Of a DNA stretch of 64,000 nucleotides, positions 1,421-28,000 are shown one piece after another; the first letter of the stretch is position 1; the number at the start of each line of letters is the position of its first letter. A model generated the notes under the pieces. That model had not been told where the DNA came from, did no database searches, and saw only the letters and a program-made list of their open reading frames with translations. Made by a program: the position numbers and the translations under genes. Source of the DNA: Macrostomum lignano (Eukaryota); assembly GCA_002269645.1 (NCBI GenBank), contig NIVC01000487.1, positions 1 to 64,000 on the forward strand, written 5' to 3'.

Positions 1421-2543
1421 TAATCTCCCGTCTTTTTAGGACTAAGCCCTCTGACCTCTGGACTAACTACCTTAATACTATCACACGTATTTGGTATTTG
1501 CGTTTAAACTAGATAAAATAAATTCAATCAACAAGCCTAAATAAGACTAAAAAATTCAGGTATTGTATGCGTATGCAGCTATATTTGCTATTGTTTCCGC
1601 AGTGCCAAAACTGAACCTAAAAAAAGTTTTAAAAAGAGAATATATATATGATAAATTATCAAATAGAGGCGTAACGAACTCAATACATGCAATAATCGAT
1701 TAGTATCAATAGAAACAATAATTGGCAGTGCGAGCCTAGAGGCTGGTGTTAGACTTGGTAGCAATACCTAATAAACCAATTGACACTGTCCAGCAGACAA
1801 TTATTAAATAGTCAGGTGGATTACATAAAAAGTGCATCGAATTCAATCTAAGTCTTATCTCATAAACTGTTGATTTACGATGCGATCCAGTTTAAACTTG
1901 AGGTGCAAATTTCTAAATTTGAGGTGTTAAAAAATTCCGAGTAAAGTACATTACATACTACTGTTTACCAACCTTGACTGTGTTACATAGTAGTACTCAG
2001 AAAGAATCGCTACAAAAATGGACCGGAAGCGTGAATATTATTAATTACTAAGCATATAGTGGATTAGTAAAGCAACAAGACAGTCCACTAGATAACAGAA
2101 ATAAACACAAAAACATTGATTTGAAAGTTTGAAACCAAACGCATGCAGAATACGGAAACGGGGGTGATCAAATCGGCTGAGAGGTGAGTACAGATCTATT
2201 TATATATATAATATAATATATTGGTTTAAGGCTTGGATATGCGATTCGTTTCATTTACTAGTAGGCGCAGGTAGCAACCATTCAACCAAGTTTTGCCAGA
2301 CTCCCCCGTCCAGTTTGTTGAAAACTGAAAACCGTATCCATAGCGGAATCCTTCCCGTTGCTCTGCAGCTAGATATAAAAGAATTACTTCGACTCGCAAA
2401 CTGTAGTCGGTGTGGCAAAAAGGCTAAGGGGTAAGAAAAAAGGCAGAATATTGGGATTTAGCAAGTAATTAAAAAAGCACAGACACGCCCAGTCTAGTTG
2501 TGCATCCAGATTCCAAATACTGTTCATTCTCTTCTTGTGAGAA

Positions 2544-2986: not shown

Positions 2987-4469
2987 TATATTAGAGTATA
3001 TTAGAGTTTGGACTGTCTGCCAAGCAGCGGGGAAGCAAGATTAGTTAGGTGACTATTAGTTTGCAGAGGGTTCAGGGCACTGCTGCAAATCACAGGCGAC
3101 AGTTGGCCAGTCAGGGGGAAGTGGATATGCCCATTCCACTGGCCGCTGAGCATTTTGTCAGGAGCGTGCACTCTGCATGTTGGACGTTAGCACTCATGGG
3201 AACAAATCGCACAAGGTCTTATTGAATTTTAGAATATACCACAGATACTAAACAGCTATATATGTCACTTACAAAATTTTGCTTATTTACTGGTTCTCTC
3301 TTAATAGCAAAATTTGCATTTTGTGCTAATTTTGTCCATTTAAAAATATTTCCTATGACAAGGCCTTTAGGGTAAAAAAACTTATAAGTTTGCTAACTCA
3401 TTTTTTCAATAAATATTAAAAAAATGAATAACTAGCAAAATGTGTAATCATTTTGACTAAAGCATTTATATGAATGTATATAAATTGCCAAGTGAAAAAC
3501 AGCCTATTGAAGAAAATTGATGACACCGGCAAGATATACAAGATTAAGCAAGATAGCCTAAGCAGGAATTTGCCACCAACATCAACTTGAAGATGAGACC
3601 AATAGTCATACCTAAAGAGAATTTGTTGTCAACCAGACCAATTAAAGAGTGGCCAATGTTGTGGCCAATAGCTAAATTTAAAATTGTTGAGGCTGCTAAC
3701 CAGATGAAAATGAGATGAAGATGAAAAACAGATTAACAATATAAAAGATAAGACTAACAGTTATATAAGCAACAAGGCAAGCAACCAACTGACAGATAAG
3801 AGAATAATGATTTGACAAGAAAACTAATAACCAATGCTATGATAGCATAGCATTTGCCAGTCTAACTAAATTTAATTCTAATTTCTAATCTGTATTATAG
3901 GTATTTTTATCCTTGTGTGCAGGCAAGTTGCCACTAATCGTTATTTTCTGTTGATTTTTGAAACTTAATTTTTTGTCAAAACATTTTTTGAATGTTTCAA
4001 CCCCTGGAAATTTTTCTTTTCCCCCAATCTTTGTCTATATGTCATTTTTATGGTTGCTGTCTTGTCCTTGTCCCAGTTGTAGTTTTCTATTTTCTCACCT
4101 TTGGCTTTGTTTTGCCCTATTTTTGGTTGCTTAATATTTTGTCATTGCTTCCTTCTTAACTTTGCTTGTGCCCAACTCTTTGTCCACCTTTTGTTCTGTG
4201 CTTGTTCAAGTCCTGTCCTATGAGTTGGAATTGTTATTTTTGCCTATATATTTATATTTTGTCTCCAATGCTAATGTCAGTATGCTATTGGTCTCCTCTC
4301 TACTCAGTTACATTTGATTAACAGATTCTATCAACTAAGTGACCATATTTTATTTGGCCTCTGTGCACTGTGGCTCTGCCAGATTTATTTGGTCTCATGT
4401 CTCGTGATAATATGAGCTAGCCAGTCCTAGAAAAGTGAGTTTTATTTAGTCAGCAGACGGGTTTTACCA

Positions 4470-8450: not shown

Positions 8451-11339
8451 CTGTTAAGACGAGCACTGCACTTCTACAGTTCTTTGGACCAAACAAAACA
8501 AAGGTATTGTTTAGACTTCATATAGGCCTATCACTTCGTGAATGTTATGCATGCAATAAAAAAATTTACATAGTTGAGTATACAGATACATAATTGTATA
8601 TTGTACAACGCACATGTACATGTATATCCAGAGTGGCAGATCGCCAACTTAAGGCCTGCCTAGTAAGGCTGTCTACAATACAAGCTATGCAACAAAAATT
8701 TTACATGGGTCATGACTGTGAAAAAATGAAGCAAAGGAACCTAGCACGAAAAACTATTGTAAAAATACGCCACGTGAGTTGCGACAACATATTACCAATT
8801 ATAAGAGTATAATTTACTCAACATGCTCATTTGAGTCATCTGCATTCAGCCGTCCTAAAATTAGATCGCGGCTAGAGGAAGAATCTTTCTAAGAAAGGAA
8901 ATATAATTTTATTACGAAATTCAAACTAAATTTGATTTAGAAACAAAACTATATACTAGCAGTTAATCTAAATATTAATGCTAAATCTGAAAGTTTTTAA
9001 ATTTTTCGACTTTCAAGACAACAATTTTGACGAAATATTATGCTACTACTTTGATTATGGCATCGTATTAAGATAAAGCCAAGATCTTGCTAGGATTTTT
9101 TTACTGTTCCTTTGACGGGTTTAGTGAAGTCTATGGGGTTAGGGTGTAGACCAGTTTAGCCAAACGGCCGTTCACTACTAGCCAAATCCTCATCACCAAT
9201 AATGCTAACAATGCGTCAGAGGCCTATACTTGTACGTACTTGTACACGTAGCCATACTAATGCTTGATTTAATTTTTCCACTAGAAGTACATGGCAGGTT
9301 CTAAAAATGTGTCAATGAGCTGAGTTGAAAGCAAATTGTTGTGCCAGGGGTGTGGGGTCTGGTGACATACCCTCCCTATCCAATGACCACTGTAAAAAAT
9401 CCAAGCATCAATGTGCATTCTCGTACGTCTTTAGCGCACATGCCTTTCTCTCCTAATTCTAAAAATTCGCTGATGGAGGGGCAACCTCACCGCTGGAGCT
9501 GCGCGCCGCCACTGGTTGAAGCTAGGTTGAAAGCCACTACATACAGAGCTGCAATGACTATATCCAAGGCCTACTAACAGATTTGCTAGTGGTACTAGTG
9601 AACGCCATTATAACAATTTAGCTATATAGCTACTTAAAAATACAGAGGCCAGGCGGCCCATGCCAGGGCTGCCATGTTTGTTATGTTTTTCGTTTGCATT
9701 CTGCGAAATATGCGTTTATCTATTTTCCGTGCTTAAAATGGTTTGACCAACTTGAGAGTCCTTTTTTGGTGTTCTTCAGTCAGTCAGTATTTTACAACCT
9801 ATGGCTAGTTAATTTTCATTCAATATATATAGTATTACATTGCAATCTCTAGAGCCTTATCGACAAGCATACAAACCTTGGAGATTTAGTATATCAAGAT
9901 TGTATTATTATGTATATATATATATTGTAATAACAATGACAATATGTCGTGTTTGTTTTAAGTTTCTGAGCCAAAATCTTAGCTTTTTTCATAATTATCT
10001 AAGCCTTTCCCTACTTAGGCCTAAATCAGGAAGTTGGCAAAGTATATAGCCAGCCTAGGCAGGTAGTATAGGCCTAATAATTGTGCACTGTTTGTCTTGT
10101 TTGTCTTCGATTTTATTGTCTAGCTAAGTTTTTCAAATTTGCTTTAAAACAATAATTCACTTAAGCAATCATGTAATTGGGCCCACTTTTTATGAAAAAA
10201 TTAAAATAAGAATAGGCCTAAATATATATAAAAACAATGTTTTTAAATTTAACCAGTTTAGTTCAACCATTTAAGCCTCTTTTTGGGCATTTGGCCAATG
10301 TATTAATGTAGAATTACAATAGGCCTAAACTAAAGCTAAGCCTAAAAAGTTTTATAACCCATTACATGCATACATGCACAACAGTTGGCCAAGTTGGCCA
10401 ATATGGCCAACCAATTTGTCAGCTAACCAATGCAAGTTGCAAAAATGCCCATCTGAATAAATACCCAAGTAATACTAAGTTAGACTAAGTAAATGATGAG
10501 GCATTTTACTTTATTAACATAATCATTGTTACTCCTAGTCCTACCGTCTGGGTTTTTTTGTGCAAATGGGTGCAAATAGCATCCTGTTCTTAAAAATTGC
10601 ACTCTGAAATTTGACTCAGGGTATGAAAAGTGCACCAGAATTTTTTGCAAGGATGTGATATAGATTTTACAATTTAGTGTTATGGACATTGAGTAGGCCT
10701 AGTGTTATTTTAGACCAGTTTTTGTCTGCAGCAGTGCAGCACATCCTGGTCTTGAAAATTGCACCCTGAAATCTATCACCTAATAGGTATTGAAAACCTA
10801 AGTTATAGACAAAAAACCTAGCTTACCATTTACCCAAAGTTGCCTTAGTTTTGCTTAGGGTTTTTTACATGTTAGGCATATTTTTGACCAAAAACTACAT
10901 CACATTTTTGTTAAAACTAAGTCACATGGCCAACCAAATTTTGGAGGTTGCACATGTATGATTGCATGGCTTTACTCAAAAAGATATATATATATATATT
11001 AGTAAAAACATGTCATTATATCAACATATCATGTCAAACGTTAAACATATAAAAGACACCATGTCATACAAAAGGGAGCCACCATGTCAAACATAAAAAA
11101 GACACCATGTCAAACATAAAAAGAAGTGTCATGCCAAACAAAGTAGAGCCACTATAAAGCTAAAAAAATTGTTGTACTAGCTACTTGTTCTCTGGTAGAT
11201 GCTTGCTATTTAAGGATAGATACTTGCTATCAAGGGGATGCTTGCTATCTGAGGGATACTTACTATTGGGGTTATTTGCTATTGGGAGATGCTTGCTCTT
11301 GGGGATGGAGGGTAGGCCTTACTTGCTAACTGAGAGGGG

Positions 11340-15412: not shown

Positions 15413-17593
15413 TATATATTAATAGACAAATGTAGGCCTTGGTGCACAAATTTGTATTTTAGCTTTGCATATAGTGCACACCAAAATATGCTAAAATATA
15501 TTATTGCACACATGTGACACCTTAGGTATAGTATGAATAGTACTCATAGGCTTGCATTTTGTAATATTTTTATTTTTTGTTTATTAGTCTAATATTATTG
15601 TTGCTGAAAGGTTAGGCCCTATAAAGCTAACCTAAAATGCATTTATATGGAATGCAGATAAAATAAGCCTTTTTACCAACTCCTAATAAAAGACCTATTC
15701 CTATAAAGTGCTTTTATCTTATTTGCTATTTTATAACACAAAGGGTAATGCAGTTGCAAATATAAGGTTAGTTTAAAGCATTGGAATCATAACTTGAATG
15801 TCAGGGGTTTTTACTAATAAAAAATTAATATAAAATTTTTGTTCTGTTCAAAACATAGAAAGTTTTCCTAAGACAATCAAGCATTAGCTATATTTTTTTG
15901 TTAAATGCTTGGTAATTTTTCAAAACAACCTAAAGTTATTGCCTGTATACTTTATTATGTTACTTAAGCATTTATCACTGATAGTCATATTGCCAAAGTA
16001 ACTAGTAGCCCTTGGTGCTAGATATTTTAGTATTACCATAGTCTAGTACTAGAGCAAAGGAAAAACTTATCTGATGTAAAGGCCATCTTCTAGACTATGA
16101 AGTATAGTATTTGGACTTTTAGTGTTTATCATTTTTTATTTTAAAGTTTCCATTCTAAATCTTCTTAAAGCAGTCTACTAGTAAAAACATGATATAGATT
16201 TCAACAACAATTGTCCAATTATCTGGCATTAGCATTGCTATTTTCTTTATTTATTAGTATATTGACATGGTTATTAGTTGTATATAAAATAGATTATTTT
16301 GCCTTAGAAATATAAAGACACTAATATAGTATTGTTCTACTTTGTTCCTTAGCTTAGATTTGATCTTTTTATTTTTAGTTTTTAAATAGGCATTTGACTG
16401 TTTCCTTATAGCAGTAAAATAAATTTCCCTTTTGGTACTTAATAAGTTTCATATAAATGATATTAGCATCTTTCAATAAGAATAAGATAGCATAGCAATA
16501 AGATTAGCTAATGTCTTTCTTTGGCTCTAAGTTTAATTATGCTTGTCTTTAGAGACCAGAATAAAGGGTTGCTTAGTGCTCAAAAAACAGGCTTAGCTTG
16601 TTTGTTAATACCAAAACACTAGTTTTTTAAGACCAGATGTTACCTTTTCAATGCCTTGCTCAAGACCATATCAAGAACTACTCAAATAGAAAGATGAGAA
16701 ATAACATTACTTAAAAATGTTTATAAGGCTAGTTTTTTTCAGAAAATAGTTACCCAGGTCACAAACCAACTGTCCTTTTAGTATATGTCTAGCACCTAAA
16801 AACCATTAAAATGGCACAGCTCAGCTCGTTGCTTTTATGAATCTATTTTATCATTCTTAGCAGACTTTGTAATATTTATGTGTAACAAAAATGATAAAAT
16901 ATATTCATAAAACCAATGAGCCAAGCTATGTCATGCATTTTTATGATTCTTAGATATAGGGAATGTATATAAAATAAAACATTAGCATGAATCCTATTTC
17001 TAAATCAAAAGCTTTATGAATACCAATAAAGCTATAAAAAGAAAACATATGAAACAATGTGTGCTGAAAAACTGAAAATTTCATGCCATAGTATTTTTTA
17101 AGAAATGTAGTTTTTCATCTTTCTACTTAAGTAGTCCTTGGAGCACATTAGTTGCTTGCTACTAGTCACTTAGTGCCAAGACCATGGCTTGTTGCTGGGA
17201 TAGATTTGCCTTAATGCTATAAATATAACCAATAGTGTCTTTGACATCAGTGCTAGAGCCTACAGCTTGTGGCCAATGGTATGTATAACTTTGATATTAG
17301 CAATATTTTGATGCCTCTGAAGTCTGAATGTTAGGATCCATTTTTAACATTAGCTTACTACTATGGAATCATAAAAACAAAACAGAATATTTACTAAAGT
17401 GTCTAAGGATTTAAAATTATTCTTGTGTATGAGTAACACAAAACAAAGTTATGATTTTTGCATTGGTATTGCTTGGAACTATTCAAATTTTGTTGAATTT
17501 CATGCTTCTGCTAATGCTTGTAAAAATATGGTAAATGAGAGGCTTTATTATCAGTATTTTTTCTTATCTTCAGCTGTAAAGCATCATAAATGG

Positions 17594-17986
17594 ATGGATT
17601 CTGATTCTGATGCTGAGTGTACAGTAGTATCAAAAGATTGCCAAAAACGGTTAGATCAAGTTGGTAAACTTGGCTTCAAAGAGGGTGCAGCAAGCAAAAG
17701 TGAACTTGATCAGCAAGTTTGCTTTGACGAAGCCTTCAAAGTTTCGGAGCCACGCGCTGAAAGACTCGGTGCATTGAGGGCGCGCTTGTTGTGCAAACGC
17801 CAACTTGTCACTAATACTGTGGCCTTTGATAGTGTCCTGAGTGATATCGAGCAATACTGCTTGCGTGAATTACCAACAAAGCTTCTTGTCAACGACACAT
17901 TAAGTATTGATAACCACATCGATCAGCTAGAAACTCTTGTGGACTTTTTGTTGTTATCCGCTCAGACTCCAAGCAGCAATGTTTAG
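17594..17986 (+). CDS. YAE1: YAE1-like protein (Yae1_N; CIA adaptor for ABCE1), 130 aa, single exon
   Basis: MDSDSDAEC...GFKEG...QQVCFDEAFK...LGALRARL aligns without gaps to the remembered human YAE1 GYRDG...QQGFNQGYK...YGRLRGTL. A pyrimidine-rich acceptor TTTTTCTTATCTTCAG ends at 17573, 20 nt before the ATG. Confidence 0.65.
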   Translation: MDSDSDAECTVVSKDCQKRLDQVGKLGFKEGAASKSELDQQVCFDEAFKVSEPRAERLGALRARLLCKRQLVTNTVAFDSVLSDIEQYCLRELPTKLLVNDTLSIDNHIDQLETLVDFLLLSAQTPSSNV

Positions 17987-20182
17987 TGACAACGAGGCGC
18001 AGGAGTTTACAGCTCAACATTGGAAACGGCTGGCGCATCTGGCTGTCACTTATAAACAGTCAGGTGATGACAATCCATTGCGCGCTTTTCTAACTAGGGC
18101 TTTTATAACAGATGGAAAAATTTACGACGGAAAATTTCATAAAGAAAAGCAGAATGAGGAGTGTCAAGTGGAGGTTGGCAAAAAATATGACGATTCGCTG
18201 AATCCAGATGAAAGTGATGCCCAACCTGTTGTAATGGCCGCAGTGCCTGCTGATGCCGTTTCTGACCGGCTGGCCGAATTGTGCATTTCAGCCGATTCTG
18301 GCACTGCCTGCGACGGCGAAGAGGAGACTCGTACTACAGAAAAAGAAATTGGGACGTCTACCAACTCGGAAATGAACAAGGAAGCCTGCGAAGTAATGAG
18401 TCCAGAAGATGAGGAGCGAATGATGGCTATGCTGGGTCTGCCAACTAATTTCGCTGTCCGTCAAAGGCGGCAACGCCGAGATGACGGCGATTCAAGTCGA
18501 AAACCAGGAAAACGTCCAATGCAGCACCAAGATCGAGATGCCCCACTAATGGAACCAGAGAAAAATATTTTAGAGACTGCCGACGAGTCGCCAAAGCGAC
18601 GCAAATCCATTCCCGAAGTTGTTTCTGAAGATTTCAAGGAAGACGCCAATGAGGAACAAGTTTACCACGGCCCGCACTGGCCAGACTATGAATGGATTGC
18701 TGGCGAGTTCGAACGCTATTGGAACGCTAATCGCGATCGCTGCATCTGGCTAGCTTGGGTGCGCCGTTTCGGTGCTTACATGACCGAGGAGAGCTGGTCT
18801 GGTATGCCAGCTAGCCTGCGCGAAAATGAGGAGTTTCTGCAACTGCTGCGCGAACAACAAGGCTCGAATTCGTCATCTGCCGGGTTGCCTGTTCAAGACT
18901 GGGATTTAGAGTGGCAGAGAAACAGTGAAACAGCCTACTGGGCCGAGATTCTCCGGTTTGTCTCCCGCTACCGACCAGGATCTGGGGCCAAACAGTCGGC
19001 CCTGAGACTGGCTAAGCGGCTTGGATTTGTTTACAAAGCTCATCTTGATCAAGATCATGTGTCGGCTAGCAACTACCAGCTGCTTCCCGCTGGAGAGACT
19101 GCCGCTCATCTATCCTACAAAGACTATAAGGCGATTGAACGAGATGCCGAAACAGAGGTATTTTTGACCTTTCTTATTTCCCTGCATATTAAAATTATTG
19201 AAACTCATGTACTATTTCTTGCTGCAGACTGTACAAGTTATAATGAGTGAGGTACAGTATTCAACCTTAGTTTTAATACTTTGTGGGAGTCAGAAGAATC
19301 ACTATAGACAAATAGGATTAGATTTCTGTTAACCTCTTTTATCACGCTTTGTTCCTGTGCAGTTCCATACTGGTCTCTTAAGATCGTAACTAAAGCCTTC
19401 TTCAACTAAAAGCCACCTTTTTGAGATTAGAGAACGCCGTTGCAGTTTACCTGTTGTCTTGTTAAGTTCCGCTACCTTCCTTCGTGTATTTTATTTTATA
19501 GGCTGCTGAGGCTAAAACCGCCCTGCAAGATCCAATACTGAACAAGTACTGGAATCAGCGCTACCGGTTCTTCGACAAATTCGACGATGGCATCCAGCTG
19601 GATAGAGAGGCCTGGTTTAGCGTCACGCCGCAGAGAATCGCCCGTCATCAGGCCGAGCGACTAAAATGCCCTGGCATCCTGATTGATGCATTTTGCGGCG
19701 CCGGTGGCAATGTTATTCAATTTGCCCAGCTGAGCGGCCACGTTATCGCCATAGACATCGATCCCAGCCGCCTGGCCATGGCCGAGCACAATGCCGGCGT
19801 CTACGGTGTGCTTAACAATATCAGCTTCCTGTGCGAAGATTTTTTCGACGCTGTGCCCCGTCTCGGCGCCATTGCCGATGCCATCTTTCTATCGCCACCT
19901 TGGGGCGGTCCCAGCTATCTGGACAAGGACGTATTCGATCTGGACGAGCCGGTTCTGTCCGGCGGTCGCTCCGTTGCCGACTGCGTTCGCTCCGCCCTGG
20001 CCCACTGCGCCAGCGTTGCTATCTACCTGCCCCGCAATGTGGACCTGGGCCAGCTGACCCGCCTGCTGGCCGGCTGTCGGGCTGGTATTGTTGAGGTTGA
20101 GCAAAATATGCTCAATGGCCGGCTGAAGGCTATCACAGTCTACACCGGTGGCCTTGTGGACGCAGTGACTGCTGACTATTAA
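17979..20182 (+). CDS. TGS1: Trimethylguanosine synthase (PIMT/TGS1), 2 exons, 619 aa
   Basis: Exons 17979-19157 and 19502-20182, GT-AG intron, phase 0. Motifs KYWNQRYRFF, WFSVTP, DAFCGAGGN, DID and FLSPPWGGP. The N-terminal Trp-rich patch resembles PIMT. Confidence 0.93.
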
Positions 20183-20284
20183 TTAGTGAAATGTACTGCA
20201 TAATGCAATATTATTTTCTTATCCTGCTTCGCAGATACTAGAATAACTAGACATCAACTAGAATAACAAGTTAGGAATAAACAA

Positions 20285-22010: not shown

Positions 22011-22082
22011 GACTCTATCTCTAAAAATAGTATAAGCTACCTATCCGCCTCCTTCAGCAATAAATCTGTCCCAATAGCAACA

Positions 22083-22481
22083 ATGGCCGGTGGCAAAGCG
22101 GGCAAAGACAGCGGCAAGGCCAAGCAGAAGGCCATCTCTCGGTCAGCCAGGGCCGGCCTACAATTCCCAGTCGGCCGTATTCATCGCCATTTGAAGACCC
22201 GAACAACCAGCCACGGTCGGGTTGGTGCCACCGCCGCCGTGTACAGCGCCGCCATCTTGGAGTACCTCACCGCCGAAGTGCTGGAGCTGGCTGGCAACGC
22301 TAGCAAAGATCTGCGCGTTAAGCGCATCACGCCGCGCCATCTGCAGCTGGCTATTCGAGGCGACGAAGAGCTGGACACGCTAATTAAAGCCACCATCGCT
22401 GGTGGCGGCGTGATCCCGCACATTCACAAGAGTCTGGTGAATAAGAAGGGCGCAGCCACTGTGCCGCCAAAGGGCCATTAA
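22083..22481 (+). CDS. H2A.Z: Histone H2A.Z (H2A.V), intronless CDS, 132 aa
   Basis: [14 protein letters not shown]...[20 protein letters not shown]...[26 protein letters not shown] is the diagnostic H2A.Z sequence. Confidence 0.98.
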
Positions 22482-22984: not shown

Positions 22985-24760
22985 CTGATCCCTTCGAACT
23001 TATCAGTGACCCTACTGTCCCTGCAGATCCATCAGTTGACCTCATTGTCCCCCCGCATATCCACCAGTGACCCCACTGTCCCAGCAGATCCATCAGTGAC
23101 CCACTGTCTTTGCAGGTCCATTAGTGACCCACTATTAGTGCAGATTCATCAGTGACCCCACTGTCCCTACAGACCCACCAGTGACCCCACTGTCCCAGCA
23201 GATCCATCAGTGACCCCACTGTCCCAGCAGATCCATCAGTGACCCCACTGTCCCAGCAGATCCATCAGTGACCTCACTATTAATGCAGATTCATCAGTGA
23301 CCTACTGTCCCTACATATCCATCAGTGACCCACTGTCCCTGCAGATCCATCAGTGACCTCATTGTCCCCCTGCGTATCCACCAGTGACCCCACTGTCCCA
23401 GCAGATCCATCAGTGACCCCACTGTCTTTGCAGGTCCATCAGTGACCCACTGTCCTTGCAGATTCATCAGTGACCCACTGTCTTTGCAGGTCCATCAGTG
23501 ACCCACTGTCCTTGCAGGTCCATCAGTGACCCACTGTCCCTGCAGATTCATCAGTGACCCCACTGTCCTTGCAGGTCCATCAGTGACCCCACTATTAATG
23601 CAGATTCATCAGTGACCTACTGTCCCTGCAGACCCACCAGTGACCCCACTGTCCCCGCAGACCCACCAGTGACCCCACTGTCCCCGCAGATCCATCAGTG
23701 ACCCACTGTCCCCGCAGATCCATCAGTGACCCACTGTCCCCGCAGATCCATCAGTGACCCACTGTCCCTGCAGATTCATCAGTGACCCCACTGTCTTTGC
23801 AGGTCCATTAGTGACCCCACTATTAATGCAGATTCATCAGTGACCCCACTGTCCTTGCAGGTCCATCAGTGACCCCACTTTTAATGCAGATTCATCAGTG
23901 ACCCCACTGTCCTTGCAGACCCACCAGTGACCCCACTGTCCTTGCAGGTCCATCAGTGACCCCACTTTTAATGCAGATTCATCAGTGACCCCACTGTCTT
24001 TGCAGACCCACCAGTGACCCCACTGTCCCCGCAGATCCATCAGTGACCCACTGTCCCCGCAGATCCATCAGTGACCCCACTGTCCTTGCAGGTCCATCAG
24101 TGACCCCACTATTAATGCAGATTCATCAGTGACCCCACTGTCCCCGCAGATCCATCAGTGACCCTACTGTCCCCGCAGATCCATCAGTGACCCACTGTCC
24201 CCGCAGATCCATCAGTGACCCCACTATTAATGCAGGTTCATCAGTGACCTACTGTCCCTACATATCCATCAGTGACCCCACTGTCCCCGCAGATCCATCA
24301 GTGACCCTACTGTCCCCGCAGATCCATCAGTGACCCACTGTCCCCGCAGATCCATCAGTGACCCACTGTCCCTGCAGATCCATCAGTGACCCACTGTCCC
24401 TACAGATCCATCAGTGACCCCACTGTCCCTACAGATCCATCAGTGACCCCACTGTCCCCGCAGATCCATCAGTGACCCACTGTCCCCGCAGATCCATCAG
24501 TGACCCACTGTCCCTACAAATCCATCAGTGACCTACTGTCCCCGCAGATCCATCAGTGACCCACTGTCCCTACATATCCATCAGTGACCCACTGTCCCCG
24601 CAGATCCATCAGTGACCCACTGTCCCTACAAATCCATCAGTGACCCACTGTCCCCGCAGATCCATCAGTGACCCACTGTCCCTACATATCCATCAGTGAC
24701 TCCACTGTTTCTGCAGATCTCCACGACTCCTTTGTGAATCCATCACTGTCCTCACTACTC
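22985..24760. repeat. 27-28-bp minisatellite (GCAGATCCATCAGTGACCCCACTGTCCC), about 1.75 kb
   Basis: Directly visible array between H2A.Z and MCM4. Confidence 0.95.
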
Positions 24761-25035: not shown

Positions 25036-28000
25036 ATGTCCGAAGCGGACCGTCAGCAGTATCAGCGACCCGGCGGCGAGCCGAGTGGCATCCACGACTC
25101 CGAGGTTGACTACAGCTCCCCGCTGCGCTACGGAACCGGCGGCGCTGGCGGCCCGCCGTCCGAGCAGCAGCCGACTTCGGTCTCCGGGGCCGGCGTCTCG
25201 TCCAATCGGTCCACCCAAAGGCCCGGCCTGCGCGAGGATCAGGCCGAGCGGCGCACCATCGCCTTGGAGCCGAACGCCGAGGACGGCGGCGTTGTCATCT
25301 GGGGCACCGATGTGAATGTCAGCCGGATTGAGCGGCTGTTCAGAACTTTTATTACTACATTCACTCCGCAGGTGAGCGCTTCAGGAGAGTTGTGCTGAAA
25401 TCTATATCGCCTTCCGCATCCTGATTCTGTAAATCGCCTTCCGCATCCTCATTCTGTGAATTCCCTTCCGCATCCTCATTCTGTAAATCACCTTCCGCAT
25501 CCTCATTCTGTAAATCGCCTTCCGCATCCTCATTCTGTAAATCACCTTCCGCATCCTCATTCTGTAAATCGCCTTCCGCATCCTCATTCTGTAAATCGCC
25601 TTCCGCATCCTCATTCTGTAAATCGCCTTCCGCATCCTCATTCTGTAAATCACCTTCCGCATCCTCATTCTGTAAATCACCTTCCGCATCCTCATTCTGT
25701 AAATCGCCTTCCGCATCTCATTCTGTGAATTCCCTTCCGCATCCTCATTCTGTAAATCGCCTTCCGCATCCTCATTCTGTAAATCGCCTTCCGCATCCTT
25801 ATTCTGTAAATCACCTTCCGCATTTTTATTCTGTAAATCGCCTTCCGCATCCTTATTCTGTAACTCGCCTTCCGCATCTTATTCTGTAAATTGCCTTCGG
25901 CATCCTCATTCTGTAAATCGCCTTCCGCATCCTCATTCTGTAAATTCCCTTCCGCATCCTTCTGTAAATCACCTTCCGCATCCTCAAATCGCCTTCCGCA
26001 TCCTCATTCTGTAAATCGCCTTCCGCATCCTCATTCTGTAAATTCCCTTCGGCATCCTCATTTTGTAAATCGCCTTCCGCATCCTCATTCTGTAAATTGT
26101 CTTCAACATCCTTATGCTATCAATCGCTTTCCACATCCTCATTCTGTACCTGTCTTCCTTAATCTCTTTCCAACTTCGTCTGTAACCTTCTGTACTACGG
26201 CGAATATTTTCTGCAGTTGCACATCTTTTTACTCTGCAGGAAGGCGCCCCGCCGCACTACATGGGCAAACTAGAAGAGATCTACGTGCTTGGCGATCGTC
26301 ACCTTGACATTGATTGCGTCCACCTGCGCCAGTACTCCGCTGAGTTGTACCGCCAACTGGTCACTTACCCGGGTGAGGTGATTCCGGCTCTGGACGTGGT
26401 CACTAATGCCATGTTCGCCGAGCAATACAGAGACGCAGTGCTCGAGCAAGAGATTATGGTGCGACCGTTTAACTGCGATCGGGCCAGGTCTCTGCGTGCC
26501 TTGGATCCCGAAGATATTGACCAGCTGGTGACTGTGCGGGGCATGGTCACCCGGCTGTCTCCCATCATACCGGAGATGCGAGTAGGCCTATTCACCTGCT
26601 CCCTGTGCGACCAGCAGGCGCAGAGTGTGCTAGACAGGGGCCGTATTGTTGAACCGGTGCTTTGTCCCACCTGTCAGGTGTGTGATTTATGATAATTGTA
26701 ATTGTATCAAATTAGGCTTTACTGTAGACAATTTTTCGAACGATTTATAATTTGCCAGACTCCGGCGGGTTATTTTAATTAAATATCGGAAGTCAATAAT
26801 ATAAAAGCTACTTAAGACGTGAGTTATGGAATTTTCCGAATTTAGTTTATTAATTTAGATTTATTCATTCAGAGAAAAAAGGCGCCCCAACACCCAGCTA
26901 GGCCGATAAACAGTTTGACTTGTGTCTGACTTTGCCCTCTCTCCTTACTGCTCTCTTATTGGCTGAGCCAGGTTAGGCCTGCCCCCTAGACGGAGTTTCG
27001 TCCGTCTCACCTCTCTCCTTACTGCTCTCCCATTGGCTCAGCTAGATTGGGCATTTCCCCTATGCGGAGTTTTGTCCGGCTCACATCTCTCCTTACCGCT
27101 CTCTCATTGGCTGAGCCAGATTGGGCCTGCTCCCATAGGCTGGGTTTCGTCTGTCTGGCGTTCACTTTTGTACATCGAGTTAAATGCTAGTTCATTATTA
27201 ACCCCATACGAGTATGCTCCTGAGCAGATCTGAGGCCGAGGAAAGCAACGGAAATTTCAGCTTCCACAATAAATTTTAGTGTCATTGCGTTGACGAACTA
27301 CTGAAAAGAGTAGAAGCTACTTTTTCACAATTTTAGTTGTGAGTGACTCTAGGAGTTTTTCTTTAAAAAAATAGAACGATTTTCCGGGATAATATTTACT
27401 TTTATATCTTACGTTTTTTCCGAGATGAGACTTGCCTTTTTCGGGAGCTATTTTTGTAAAACCTCTACATAAAAGTGTGTGTATAAAGGCTTCAATGATG
27501 ACAGCTTGTAGCAATTTAAGTCCAGCTGTCGAAGAGCTAAAATATGCAATGCCATCCGACTATTCAGGGTCGCAACAGTTTCGATCTGGTGCACAATCGG
27601 AGCAAATTCACCGACAAGCAGCGGGTTAAACTGCAAGAATCGCCGGACGAAATGCCAGCTGGCCAGACGCCGCAGACTTTATTGGTATACGCCTATGGCG
27701 ATCTGGTTGACACTGTACTACCTGGAGACCGGGTCACCATCACCGGGATCTATCGGGCCACGCCAATGCGAGCTAATCCCAGGTATGAATGTCCAGTTCT
27801 AGGCTTAGCATCGATACTAATTAAAGTGAGCTGTTTATGCATTCTTAAAAGCCGTCGCATCGCCCACCCCCACCCTACGCAGGCAGACGTCCATTCTGTC
27901 CGTGTTCCAGACCCACATCGACGTGGTGCACTTCGAACGCGAGAAGAGCGGCCCAGACGATATTGGCGATGGTAGCAACTGTCTGACCCCGGCCCGAGTT

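What the first reader, a model, noticed from the sequence alone, without database searches (positions are those of the whole stretch)
17528..18100. YAE1-like ORF overlaps the TGS1 start codon: candidate bicistronic or acceptor-switched unit
Seen: the YAE1-like ORF ends ...AGC AAT GTT TAG (stop 17984-17986), while the TGS1 ATG is at 17979-17981, an 8-nt overlap (ATGTTTAG) with no intergenic DNA. There are two strong acceptors: one before the YAE1 ATG (AG 17572-17573) and one inside YAE1 (CTTTTTGTTGTTATCCGCTCAG, AG 17964-17965) 13 nt before the TGS1 ATG. A possible donor ATG|GTAAAT lies at 17531. Knowledge: Drosophila Tgs1 is encoded with an unrelated upstream ORF (moi) on a bicistronic locus. 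Yae1-Lto1 delivers Fe-S clusters to the ribosome-recycling factor ABCE1. TGS1 makes the TMG cap of snRNAs and SL RNA. Inference: either stop-start reinitiation, possibly sensitive to the ABCE1 activity that YAE1 itself supports, or alternative cis/SL-trans acceptor choice yielding YAE1+TGS1 versus TGS1-only mRNAs. Either would be an independent recurrence of a bicistronic TGS1 coupled to a different partner.
Basis: partly seen in the sequence, partly recalled or inferred. Interest (0 to 1): 0.82.

Follow-up and report, generated by a model that had tools for sequence, protein, structure and literature searches.

The report
Flatworm TGS1 shares overlapping two-gene mRNA
In the flatworm Macrostomum lignano a conserved 130-codon gene of unknown function (not demonstrably YAE1) ends 8 bases inside the start of the cap-methylase gene TGS1, so both proteins probably come from one messenger RNA, an arrangement already known in kind from Drosophila (moi-Tgs1).

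Summary
The sequence observation is correct. The window is Macrostomum lignano NIVC01000487.1. A 130-codon ORF (17594-17986) overlaps the TGS1 start (17979) by 8 nt.

The upstream ORF is a real gene. A spliced transcript contig from a related species carries the same ORF (63% identity, dN/dS 0.13), with TGS1 starting at the identical +385-nt, +1-frame offset.

"YAE1-like" is not supported. Pfam Yae1_N, phmmer against 1.8 billion proteins, the PDB and a fold search all give nothing. Only 3 of the 10 defining glycines are present. The ABCE1-feedback idea therefore falls.

The outer acceptor (17573|17574) is very probably SL-trans-spliced: two paralogous contigs carry the spliced-leader 3' end in its place, probably written in by RNA-seq polishing.

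For TGS1 translation I favour scanning on the two-gene mRNA. There is no AUG in any frame for 366 nt before the TGS1 AUG in either species. All upstream AUGs have a weak context, the TGS1 AUG a strong one. The published TGS1 gene model seems not to be cut at the inner acceptor.

The inner acceptor-like site is nonetheless the best in both transcripts and remains a live rival.

Verdict: a new member of a known kind, of moderate interest.

The parts
17553..17573 (+). Outer splice acceptor (AGTATTTTTTCTTATCTTCAG|). The exon starts at 17574. Very probably the SL trans-splice site of the unit.
   Evidence: It fits the M. lignano SL-acceptor motif [T/C]TNCAG (PMC8629364). In paralogous contig L001 the same place reads TTATTGCATG|CTGTAAAGC, and in L004 CTCATG|CTG. 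These are the last 10 and 4 nt of the SL CGGTCTCTTACTGCGAAGACTCAATTTATTGCATG. The assembly was polished with RNA-seq reads (PMC5730564).
17590..17604 (+). Mini-ORF 1, ATG GAT GGA TTC TGA (MDGF*). It is out of frame and overlaps the start of the 130-aa ORF. Context -3 T.
   Evidence: Start, length and stop are the same in L002 (17-31).
17594..17986 (+). Upstream cistron: 130-aa ORF with no internal Met, predicted all-helical, an orphan protein.
   Evidence: It is 63% identical to the L002 orthologue. dN/dS is 0.13, differences by codon position are 31/27/67, and the other frames are full of stops. There is no Pfam, phmmer, PDB or Foldseek match. The AF2 model has 5 helices with pLDDT 62.
17610..17627 (+). 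Mini-ORF 2, ATG CTG AGT GTA CAG TAG (MLSVQ*), in the +1 frame. Context -3 C, +4 C.
   Evidence: L002 37-54 has the same length and stop position.
17613..17978 (+). AUG-free tract: 366 nt without ATG in any frame, up to the TGS1 start.
   Evidence: The tract is identical in extent in L002. TGS1 CDS has about 7 ATG per 367 nt. P(no out-of-frame ATG | protein) is 0.02-0.07 per species. P(no Met) is about 0.065.
17945..17965 (+). Inner acceptor-like site TTTTTGTTGTTATCCGCTCAG|ACT, inside the last codons of the upstream ORF and 13 nt before the TGS1 ATG. Use unproven.
   Evidence: It is the top-scoring pyrimidine-tract+YAG site in 17574-20182 (14/18 Py). The homologous L002 site is the top one in that transcript. 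It does not fit [T/C]TNCAG, shows no SL imprint in three copies, and the annotated TGS1 model is not cut here.
17979..17986 (+). Overlap ATGTTTAG: the TGS1 start codon (17979-81) and the upstream ORF stop (17984-86).
   Evidence: L002 has ATGCCAAGTAA (11 nt) with its ATG at the same offset.
17979..19157 (+). TGS1 exon 1 (codons 1-393), with start context GCAGCAATGT (-3 G).
   Evidence: tblastn of PAA82187.1 gives 100% identity. Start context.
19158..19501 (+). TGS1 intron (GTATTT...TTATAG), 344 nt.
   Evidence: It is absent from the L002 contig, which is therefore spliced RNA.
19502..20182 (+). TGS1 exon 2, holding the cap guanine-N2 methyltransferase domain and the stop codon.
   Evidence: Pfam PF09445 at 3.2e-24; tblastn.
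20276..20281 (+). AATAAA: the first exonic canonical poly(A) signal downstream of the upstream ORF's stop, 94 nt after the TGS1 stop.
   Evidence: The only other canonical hexamer (ATTAAA 19188) lies in the intron.

Best explanation
This is a conserved two-cistron (dicistronic) transcription unit of Macrostomum. The pre-mRNA receives the spliced leader at 17574. The first cistron encodes a lineage-restricted, Met-free, helical 130-aa protein of unknown function that is not demonstrably Yae1. The second cistron is TGS1, whose AUG sits 5 nt before the first cistron's stop codon.

The mature mRNA keeps both ORFs and uses the TGS1 poly(A) signal. Ribosomes reach the TGS1 AUG by scanning. Some 40S subunits leak past the weak-context AUGs at 17590, 17594 and 17610, or translate the 4-5-codon mini-ORFs and resume scanning. 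They then meet no AUG for 366 nt until the good-context TGS1 AUG. The strength of the 5' AUG cluster thus sets the ratio of the two proteins.

Shown:
- the overlap;
- conservation and purifying selection of both ORFs;
- the AUG-free tract and the start-codon contexts in two species;
- co-linearity on a spliced transcript in the second species.

Inferred:
- SL use at 17574, from imprints in the assembly;
- absence of a cut at the inner acceptor, from annotation conventions;
- the translational mechanism itself.

An SL-trans-spliced, TGS1-only mRNA from the inner acceptor may coexist as a minor or conditional route.
For: (1) Real first cistron. It is 63% identical to its orthologue at the protein level. 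pN is 0.22 against pS 0.70, giving omega 0.13, the same as TGS1 exon 1.

(2) Same architecture in two species. The ATG-to-ATG offset is 385 nt with TGS1 in the +1 frame, and the overlaps are 8 and 11 nt.

(3) L002 is one 2414-nt contig with both ORFs, the TGS1 intron removed, and an Illumina adapter at its 3' end.

(4) AUG desert. There are 0 ATG in 366 nt in both species and no internal Met. Synonymous-codon nulls give P=0.039 and 0.017. A codon-order shuffle gives 0.0065 and 0.013. TGS1 has 6.6-7.3 ATG per 367 nt.

(5) Start contexts. The upstream AUGs have -3 = T, T, C in both species. The TGS1 AUG has -3 = G (M. lignano) or A (L002). The H2A and MCM starts nearby also have a -3 purine.

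(6) These are the published signatures of leaky-scanning bicistrons in green algae and in Drosophila stoned/Snapin (PMC11892635).

(7) In M. lignano there is no exonic canonical poly(A) signal between the first stop and the TGS1 3'UTR AATAAA at 20276.

(8) The deposited annotation starts CDSs at the first transcript codon when no upstream stop exists. H2A begins NKSVPIATM... right after its acceptor, and P0001 begins KWM. TGS1, by contrast, is annotated as complete from its Met in two loci. Its transcript model must therefore include the in-frame stop at 17928, upstream of the inner acceptor.

(9) SL imprints occur at the outer acceptor in 2 of 3 copies and at the inner one in none.
Against: - There are no direct M. 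lignano transcript, Ribo-seq or protein data in hand.
- The AUG-desert statistics are moderate: about 1e-3 per species when combined with Met absence, and the two species are not independent.
- A de Bruijn contig can merge two overlapping mRNAs, so L002 does not prove a mature bicistronic molecule. The nature of run SRR30276804 could not be checked.
- The best acceptor-like sequence of the whole transcript lies 13 nt before the TGS1 AUG in both species. A pure scanning model does not explain this.
- Leaking past three or four AUGs, one of them with +4 G, may give little TGS1.
- In contig L001 the annotation calls the short ORF and not TGS1, which hints at a cut somewhere in that copy.
Confidence: 0.5

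Rival explanations
1. Acceptor switching. Each pre-mRNA is SL-trans-spliced either at 17574 or at the inner acceptor 17965|17966. The first choice gives an mRNA that yields the 130-aa protein. The second gives a TGS1-only mRNA with a 13-nt leader after the SL, and the upstream ORF is discarded as outron. TGS1 protein then comes essentially from the second mRNA.
For: The inner site is the strongest pyrimidine-tract+CAG candidate in the M. lignano unit (14/18 Py, equal to the proven outer site). Its homologue is the strongest in the L002 transcript. The T-rich tract and CAG|AC persist although the encoded C-terminal tail is poorly conserved (pN 0.41 against 0.20 for the rest of the ORF). [quoted passage not shown] The SL's own AUG would open only a 7-codon ORF (MTPSSNV*).
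Against: GCTCAG and ACACAG do not fit the [T/C]TNCAG SL-acceptor motif. There is no SL imprint at this site in three polished copies, whereas the outer site shows one in two copies. The annotated TGS1 transcript models extend upstream of 17928, so they were not cut here by the SL-peak-based pipeline. This rival does not explain the AUG-free first cistron or the weak and strong start contexts. The T-rich Leu/Phe codons are typical of this low-GC3 ORF (GC3 0.39).
Confidence: 0.25
2. Termination-reinitiation. Ribosomes finish the 130-codon ORF at UAG 17984, stay on the mRNA, back up 5 nt and restart at AUG 17979.
For: Stop and start overlap in both species (8 and 11 nt). In the Drosophila palustris moi-Tgs1 locus the Moi stop lies 4 nt before the first ATG of the Tgs1 reading frame (the presumed Tgs1 start), and Moi contains out-of-frame AUGs, so a termination-coupled route is plausible for that relative.
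Against: The upstream ORF is long, and reinitiation after long ORFs normally needs a dedicated element. No UGGGA (TURBS motif 1) occurs anywhere in the ORF in either species. The conserved HIDQLETLVD block varies at third positions, so its conservation is at the protein level, not the RNA level. The region has no significant structure (z=-0.53). The spacing between AUG and stop differs between species (2 against 5 nt). This rival does not require, and so does not explain, a 366-nt AUG desert.
Confidence: 0.1
3. The upstream ORF is a diverged Yae1/Lto1-type deca-GX3 adaptor, and TGS1 translation is coupled to ABCE1 activity.
For: Residues 22-64 align without gaps to a Yae1_N domain in the register G[FY][KR][ED]G...Q..F[DN]..[FY]K...G.LR (hhalign P=0.005 for that single comparison). 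Small residues occupy 7 of the 10 GX3 positions. An acidic Ser/Asp N-terminus precedes it.
Against: hhalign probability is only 6.9%. Pfam Yae1_N gives no hit for either orthologue at E<=10, while a true fragment gives 1e-14. Gly occupies only 3 of 10 positions. phmmer against 1.84e9 representatives finds no Yae1. There is no evidence of any kind for an ABCE1 link.
Confidence: 0.04
4. Artefact or single protein. Either the two ORFs are one TGS1 reading frame split by an assembly indel, or they are joined in vivo by +1 ribosomal frameshifting at GUU UAG U.
For: The assembly is PacBio-based. The frames overlap only across 17928-17986, which contains a T5 run. The TGS1 frame is +1 relative to the upstream ORF.
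Against: The same frame relation appears in three genomic copies and in an independent Illumina-based contig of another species. The TGS1 AUG is conserved at the same position although the surrounding tail is not. The upstream ORF shows no similarity to the N-terminal regions of 123 other TGS1 proteins (best E=0.28 in that tiny database).
Confidence: 0.03

Closest known systems
Drosophila moi-Tgs1 bicistronic locus (CG31241)
   Same: TGS1 is the second cistron behind a small, fast-evolving, domain-less protein on one transcript (PMC7289441, PMC7605716). In the D. palustris locus read here, the 188-aa Moi stop lies 4 nt before the first ATG of the Tgs1 frame. Moi, like the flatworm ORF, has no internal Met.
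   Different: There is no detectable homology between Moi and the flatworm ORF (hhalign probability 0.4%). Moi has a small intron and four out-of-frame AUGs, so it has no AUG desert. The ORFs abut rather than overlap. Drosophila has no SL trans-splicing. The flatworm ORF is under stronger constraint: its pN/pS is 0.32, against the pN/pS of 0.47 reported for Moi (PMC4643883).
Leaky-scanning dicistronic mRNAs: Drosophila stoned and Snapin (Wall et al. 2005, as cited in PMC11892635 and PMC4528330) and green-algal bicistrons (PMC11892635)
   Same: ORF 1 has a weak start context, AUGs are scarce before ORF 2, ORF 2 has a good context, and the ORFs lie close together or overlap.
   Different: The mechanism is not tested here. 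The mRNA additionally carries an SL, whose own AUG opens a 2-codon ORF, and two conserved mini-ORFs at the 5' AUG cluster. Reinitiation after mini-ORFs may therefore contribute.
SL-resolved operons of M. lignano and other flatworms, nematodes and tunicates
   Same: The organism is the same. The first gene is SL-trans-spliced, the genes are co-oriented, and an acceptor-like site lies just before the downstream start.
   Different: There is no intercistronic region. The candidate acceptor lies 19 nt upstream of the first gene's stop codon. One pre-mRNA therefore cannot yield both a complete upstream mRNA and an SL-TGS1 mRNA. No poly(A) signal lies between the cistrons.
Yae1/Lto1 deca-GX3 adaptors (Pfam PF09811)
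   Same: Small helical protein with an acidic N-terminus and a GFKEG...FD..F..G.LR register resemblance.
   Different: It fails the family HMM and lacks most of the defining glycines.

Membership tests
Yae1_N / deca-GX3 (Yae1, Lto1) | Match to Pfam PF09811 at or above the gathering score (27.5 bits) | tested here: not met
   No hit at E<=1 or E<=10 for the M. lignano ORF, the L002 orthologue or the isolated 48-aa segment. A positive-control Yae1_N fragment scores 54.4 bits, E=1e-14.
Yae1_N / deca-GX3 (Yae1, Lto1) | Ten consecutive GX3 repeats with Gly at every fourth position | tested here: not met
   The register from G27 reads G,G,K,D,C,A,S,A,G,A in M. lignano and G,G,K,D,L,A,S,A,G,A in L002, so 3 of 10 are Gly.
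Yae1_N / deca-GX3 (Yae1, Lto1) | Binds Lto1 and recruits ABCE1/Rli1 for Fe-S insertion | not testable with these tools
   Needs a pull-down or complementation experiment.
Dicistronic mRNA translated by leaky scanning | Two conserved protein-coding ORFs on one mature transcript | tested here: met
   The L002 spliced contig carries both ORFs. Both are under purifying selection. For M. lignano itself this is inferred from the annotated TGS1 model extending upstream of 17928.
Dicistronic mRNA translated by leaky scanning | Weak start context at ORF 1 and at other upstream AUGs, good context at ORF 2 | tested here: met
   The -3 bases are T, T, C for the upstream AUGs and G or A for TGS1, in both species. 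A species-specific Kozak model was not built.
Dicistronic mRNA translated by leaky scanning | Depletion of AUG in all frames upstream of ORF 2 | tested here: met
   0 ATG in 366 nt in both species. The nulls give P=0.007-0.07.
Dicistronic mRNA translated by leaky scanning | ORF 2 output inversely dependent on ORF 1 start strength | not testable with these tools
   Needs reporters or Ribo-seq.
SL-resolved operon | SL added at an acceptor immediately upstream of the downstream cistron | tested here: inconclusive
   A strong acceptor-like site is conserved in two species. Against it: no motif match, no SL imprint, and the annotation is not cut there.
SL-resolved operon | Cleavage and polyadenylation of the upstream mRNA between the cistrons | tested here: not met
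   The cistrons overlap. The acceptor lies upstream of the first stop. There is no canonical poly(A) hexamer before the TGS1 3'UTR apart from one in the intron.
moi-Tgs1 locus | Upstream cistron homologous to Moi | tested here: not met
   hhalign probability 0.4%, E=0.14 over 12 columns. phmmer of the ORF finds no Moi.
moi-Tgs1 locus | TGS1 as the 3' cistron, with its start next to the 5' cistron's stop | tested here: met
   The spacing is -8 nt here and -11 nt in L002, against +4 nt to the first ATG of the Tgs1 frame in D. palustris.
Termination-reinitiation (TURBS-type) | UGGGA-type 18S-complementary motif within about 100 nt upstream of the stop/start | tested here: not met
   No TGGGA anywhere in the upstream ORF of either species. 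M. lignano 18S was not available for a wider complementarity search.

The most novel reading that the evidence does not exclude
TGS1 has been placed behind a small, Met-free, rapidly evolving upstream cistron in two distant animal phyla: the flatworm ORF here and Drosophila Moi. Either the pairing is very old and the partners have diverged beyond recognition, or selection repeatedly favours making TGS1 as a scanning-limited second cistron. In the flatworm the shared mRNA also carries the spliced leader, whose trimethylguanosine cap is made by TGS1 itself. The enzyme's own synthesis, and its ratio to the partner protein, could therefore feed back on cap hypermethylation.
Probability: 0.12. Interest if true: 0.7.

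Novelty: new member of a known kind. Interest (0 to 1): 0.42.

Why it matters
The finding gives a second, independent animal example of TGS1 encoded as the downstream cistron of an overlapping two-gene mRNA. The organism has transgenesis, RNAi and SL trans-splicing, so leaky scanning, reinitiation and acceptor switching can be separated experimentally. It adds an unannotated or under-annotated conserved protein-coding gene to the M. lignano catalogue. The gene is treated as TGS1 5'UTR in two of three loci. It also shows that RNA-seq polishing left spliced-leader imprints in the Mlig_3_7 assembly. These imprints are an annotation hazard, but they also mark trans-splice sites. The finding removes an attractive but unsupported YAE1-ABCE1-TGS1 regulatory story.

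Tried and rejected
Searches that found nothing for the 130-aa ORF:
- Pfam for the M. lignano ORF, its orthologue and the motif segment: no Yae1_N.
- Word-indexed search of 5.8e9 proteins: self only.
- phmmer against 1.84e9 representatives: self plus one spurious hit to a bacterial 89-aa tandem-repeat protein.
- PDB sequence search: nothing below E=0.5.
- AlphaFold2 single-sequence model (pLDDT 62) with Foldseek against the PDB: best E=2.1.

Hypotheses tested and rejected:
- Assembly frameshift. Rejected by three genomic copies and an independent species.
- Fission of an ancestral TGS1 N-terminus. The ORFs, a profile of the two ORFs, and D. palustris Moi were searched with phmmer/hmmsearch --max against 123 other TGS1 proteins. 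For the M. lignano ORF and the profile the best E was 0.28; the table rows for the L002 ORF and for Moi were cut off and not read.
- Moi homology. Rejected.
- RNA structure around the overlap. RNAalifold and RNAfold gave z=-0.53 and no covariation independent of coding.
- TURBS motif. Absent.

Looking for the arrangement elsewhere:
- The full-length TGS1 search returned only one close relative (P0003). The rest were arthropod, vertebrate, mollusc and plant TGS1s.
- Four Logan contigs were sampled. Three had readable DNA (L005, L007, L008). No upstream gene is called on any of them, and the ORF listing run for L005 alone shows no convincing upstream ORF. The fourth, the P0019 contig, has a 213-aa upstream gene call but no DNA was available.

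Direct M. lignano transcript evidence:
- Exact-product look-up of the 130-aa ORF found no contig.
- Gene ID Mlig033998 and run SRR30276804 were not found in papers or supplements.
- Raffa et al. 2009 is not held in the library.

Full report
**Where the window comes from.** The window is positions 1-64000 of Macrostomum lignano contig NIVC01000487.1 (assembly GCA_002269645.1, Mlig_3_7). Locus L003, fetched for the annotated TGS1 protein, is identical to window 7979-30182. The protein is PAA82187.1, 'hypothetical protein BOX15_Mlig033998g6', named trimethylguanosine synthase by UniRef. Two paralogous or homeologous copies of the locus exist: L001 (NIVC01002124.1) and L004 (NIVC01001347.1).

**The observation.**
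- A 130-codon ORF runs from ATG 17594 to TAG 17984-17986.
- The TGS1 ATG is at 17979, so the overlap is ATGTTTAG, with TGS1 in the +1 frame.
- TTTTTTCTTATCTTCAG|C ends at 17573.
- TTTTTGTTGTTATCCGCTCAG|A ends at 17965, 13 nt before the TGS1 ATG.
- ATG|GTAAAT lies at 17529-17537.
- TGS1 has two coding exons, 17979-19157 and 19502-20182. The second carries Pfam Methyltransf_15 (3e-24).

**Is the upstream ORF a gene?** Yes. The only close relative of the M. lignano TGS1 in 5.8e9 proteins is P0003 (62% identity overall, 51% in the non-catalytic N-terminal part). It is encoded on a 2414-nt Logan contig from run SRR30276804 (L002). The species could not be identified. The alignable non-catalytic region suggests another macrostomid.

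L002 has a continuous TGS1 ORF across the position of the M. lignano intron and ends in Illumina adapter. It is therefore spliced RNA. Upstream of TGS1 it carries a 131-codon ORF, 63% identical to the M. lignano ORF.

Selection analysis:
- Nei-Gojobori gives pN=0.22, pS=0.70 and omega=0.13.
- 67 of 125 differences fall at third codon positions.
- The two other frames contain 4-15 stops and give omega of about 1.1-1.4.
- The constraint equals that on the N-terminal half of TGS1 (omega 0.13; the methyltransferase domain has 0.02).

The TGS1 ATG lies exactly 385 nt after the upstream ATG in both species. The overlaps are 8 nt (ATGTTTAG) and 11 nt (ATGCCAAGTAA). Three genomic copies are identical across the junction. 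This excludes an assembly frameshift.

- Pfam finds no Yae1_N in the M. lignano ORF, in the orthologue or in the isolated motif segment, even at E<=10.
- phmmer against 1.84e9 representative proteins returns only the protein itself and a spurious hit to a bacterial tandem-repeat protein.
- The PDB sequence search, a single-sequence AlphaFold2 model (five helices, pLDDT 62) and Foldseek give nothing.
- A profile of the two orthologues aligns without gaps to the Yae1_N fragment (residues 22-64; GFKEG...QQ..FD..FK...G.LR), but with hhalign probability 6.9%.
- Gly occupies only 3 of the 10 GX3 positions in both species.

The proposed link to ABCE1 therefore has no footing. The ORF is also not detectably related to Drosophila Moi or to the N-terminal regions of 123 other TGS1 proteins. 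It is best called a lineage-restricted orphan.

**The outer acceptor.** The M. lignano spliced leader is CGGTCTCTTACTGCGAAGACTCAATTTATTGCATG, and SL acceptors carry [T/C]TNCAG (PMC8629364). The window has CTTCAG|CTGTAAAGC. At the same place L001 reads TTATTGCATG|CTGTAAAGC and L004 reads CTCATG|CTGTAAAGC. The bases just upstream of the junction have been replaced by the last 10 or 4 bases of the SL.

In L001 this is five mismatches in six bases, in an alignment that is otherwise 98.4% identical. It is the only substitution cluster of that kind outside repeats. Mlig_3_7 was polished with Pilon using RNA-seq reads as well as genomic reads (PMC5730564). I infer that SL-bearing reads overwrote the acceptor. 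That amounts to indirect read evidence for SL trans-splicing at 17574. The H2A acceptor nearby shows no such imprint, so the artefact is not universal.

1. After the ATG at 17610 there is no ATG in any frame for 366 nt, until the TGS1 ATG. The same is true in L002 (37 to 406) despite 32% nucleotide divergence.
   - Neither protein has an internal Met. At the TGS1 Met frequency of 2.1%, P is about 0.065.
   - Given the proteins, the chance of no out-of-frame ATG is 0.039 and 0.017 (synonymous permutation), or 0.069 and 0.030 (codons drawn from TGS1 usage).
   - TGS1 itself has about 7 ATG per 367 nt.

2. The three upstream ATGs (17590, 17594, 17610) have a pyrimidine at -3 in both species. The TGS1 ATG has G (M. 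lignano) or A (L002), like the H2A and MCM starts nearby.

3. ATG 17590 and ATG 17610 open conserved 4- and 5-codon mini-ORFs (MDGF*, MLSVQ*). The SL's own AUG would open a 2-codon ORF (ML*). Ribosomes that use these can resume scanning, and the next AUG they meet is that of TGS1.

Weak ORF 1 context, AUG depletion before ORF 2 and a good ORF 2 context are the published signature of leaky-scanning bicistrons. This holds for green algae and, as cited there, for Drosophila stoned and Snapin (PMC11892635). FlyBase lists dicistronic pairs whose stop-to-start distance is negative (PMC4528330).

Two further points fit a shared mRNA.
- In M. lignano the first exonic canonical poly(A) hexamer after the upstream stop is the AATAAA at 20276, 94 nt past the TGS1 stop.
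- The deposited annotation begins a CDS at the first transcript codon when no in-frame stop lies upstream. H2A starts NKSVPIATM... one base after its acceptor, and the upstream ORF in L001 is recorded as KWM.... TGS1, however, is recorded from its Met in two loci. Its transcript model must therefore reach the in-frame stop at 17928, upstream of the inner acceptor. The pipeline that built these models cut transcription units at SL-read peaks (PMC5730564), so it apparently found none at 17966. This is inference from conventions, not from reads.

**The inner acceptor.** It cannot be dismissed. With 14 of 18 pyrimidines before CAG it is the best acceptor-like site between 17574 and 20182, as good as the outer site and the real intron acceptor. 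The homologous site is also the best in the 2.3-kb L002 transcript. This holds although the encoded tail (DFLLLSAQTPSSNV against DLLFFDTQTKCENAK) is the least conserved part of the protein.

The site lies 19 nt upstream of the first cistron's stop. One pre-mRNA could therefore give either an upstream-ORF mRNA or an SL-TGS1 mRNA, never both. This would be alternative trans-splicing, not ordinary operon resolution.

Four points count against a major role:
- The site does not match the SL-acceptor motif.
- It shows no SL imprint in three copies.
- The annotation is not cut there.
- It leaves the AUG desert unexplained.

I rate it at 0.25 as the main route. It may well coexist with scanning.

**Other rivals.**
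- Termination-reinitiation at the overlapping stop/start would have to work after a 130-codon ORF. There is no UGGGA motif, no RNA-level conservation and no significant structure.
- A +1 frameshift fusion is unlikely, because the TGS1 AUG is conserved in an otherwise variable tail.

**Comparison with Drosophila.** Moi and Tgs1 are made from one mRNA of the bicistronic locus CG31241 (PMC7289441, PMC7605716). Moi is fast-evolving and has no identified domain (PMC4643883). In the D. palustris locus read here (L006):
- Moi is 188 aa in two exons.
- Its stop lies 4 nt before the first ATG of the Tgs1 reading frame, which I take to be the Tgs1 start. The deposited gene model (P0113) instead fuses Moi and Tgs1.
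- It has no internal Met but four out-of-frame ATGs.

The flatworm locus works like this one in outline. The partner, the overlap, the AUG desert and the SL are different.

**Verdict.** The YAE1 label and the ABCE1 loop are not supported. The most likely mechanism is scanning-dependent translation of TGS1 from an SL-capped dicistronic mRNA (0.5), with inner-acceptor switching as the main rival. This is a new member of a known kind (dicistronic animal genes) and a second case involving TGS1. It is moderately interesting, chiefly because M. lignano is experimentally tractable.

Noticed in passing
L001:9977-9986 and L004 (homologous to window 17564-17573): The Mlig_3_7 assembly carries the 3' end of the spliced leader (TTATTGCATG, or CATG) in place of the genomic acceptor in two of three copies. 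This is probably an imprint of RNA-seq-based Pilon polishing. Such imprints destroy the AG in the assembly but mark trans-splice sites.
   Followed up: yes
window 8550-8560 and 1686-1695, minus strand: There are 11- and 10-nt matches to the SL 3' end (tttattgcatg|CATAAC..., ttattgcatg|TATTGAG...). About 0.1 such matches are expected by chance in the window. They may be further SL imprints at minus-strand trans-splice sites. No obvious ORF follows either one.
   Followed up: partly
window 22052-22481: A histone H2A gene lies here. Its annotated product begins [12 protein letters not shown]..., a 5'-partial CDS that starts one base after a consensus SL acceptor CTTCAG|C (22057|22058). The acceptor is intact in all three copies. 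An MCM gene follows from 25036. The upstream ORF-TGS1 unit, H2A and MCM are all on the + strand.
   Followed up: partly
window 17594-17983 against L001 and L004: The upstream ORF has 0 of 390 nucleotide differences between the window and L001, and 1 against L004. The adjacent TGS1 CDS has dS=0.04 between the window and L001 copies, so about 5 differences would be expected. Possible causes are gene conversion, constraint on synonymous sites, or homogenisation by multi-mapped RNA-seq polishing.
   Followed up: no
window 17931-17940 and 17999-18008: RNAalifold pairs AAACUCUUGU with GCAGGAGUUU. This 10-bp helix would enclose the inner acceptor, the TGS1 AUG and the upstream stop. Both arms lie in conserved codons, there is no independent covariation, and the MFE z-score is -0.53.
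   Followed up: partly
L008:403-3437 (SRR18067489) and L005:463-2820 (SRR18067494), unknown organism: On the L008 transcript contig a TGS1 ORF is followed about 420 nt downstream, on the same strand, by an mRNA cap guanine-N7 methyltransferase ORF (PF03291). This may be a two-gene unit of two cap-modifying enzymes. L005 shows the same layout, but its downstream 147-aa ORF runs off the contig end and has no family assignment.
   Followed up: no
L006:2501-4498 (Drosophila palustris JBNQSE010000006.1): The deposited gene model (P0113, 614 aa) fuses Moi and Tgs1 into one protein through an invented intron. Read directly, Moi (188 aa, with a 56-nt intron) stops at 3123, and the first ATG of the Tgs1 frame is at 3128.
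   Followed up: partly
upstream ORF residues 108-117; D. palustris Moi residues 163-172: HIDQLETLVD and RIDQAEELIQ lie at similar distances from the C-termini of the two TGS1-upstream proteins. hhalign gives E=0.14, which is not significant. Recorded only as a lead.
   Followed up: partly
window 23002-24719, 25406-26148, 43783-46836, 50747-51808 and others: The window is very rich in tandem arrays (34 TRF rows). Examples are a 29-nt unit x60, a 27-nt unit x28 just downstream of the MCM start, 3 kb of (CTTGTGTG)n and 1 kb of (CTAT)n. These explain the extreme skews in the composition profile.
   Followed up: no
window 17529-17573: ATATG|GTAAAT...CTTCAG| could form a 42-nt cis intron ending at the SL acceptor. 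The upstream exon would end in ATG, as the SL does, and give the same ATG CTG TAA mini-ORF. The sequence is conserved in all three copies. Its use is unknown.
   Followed up: no
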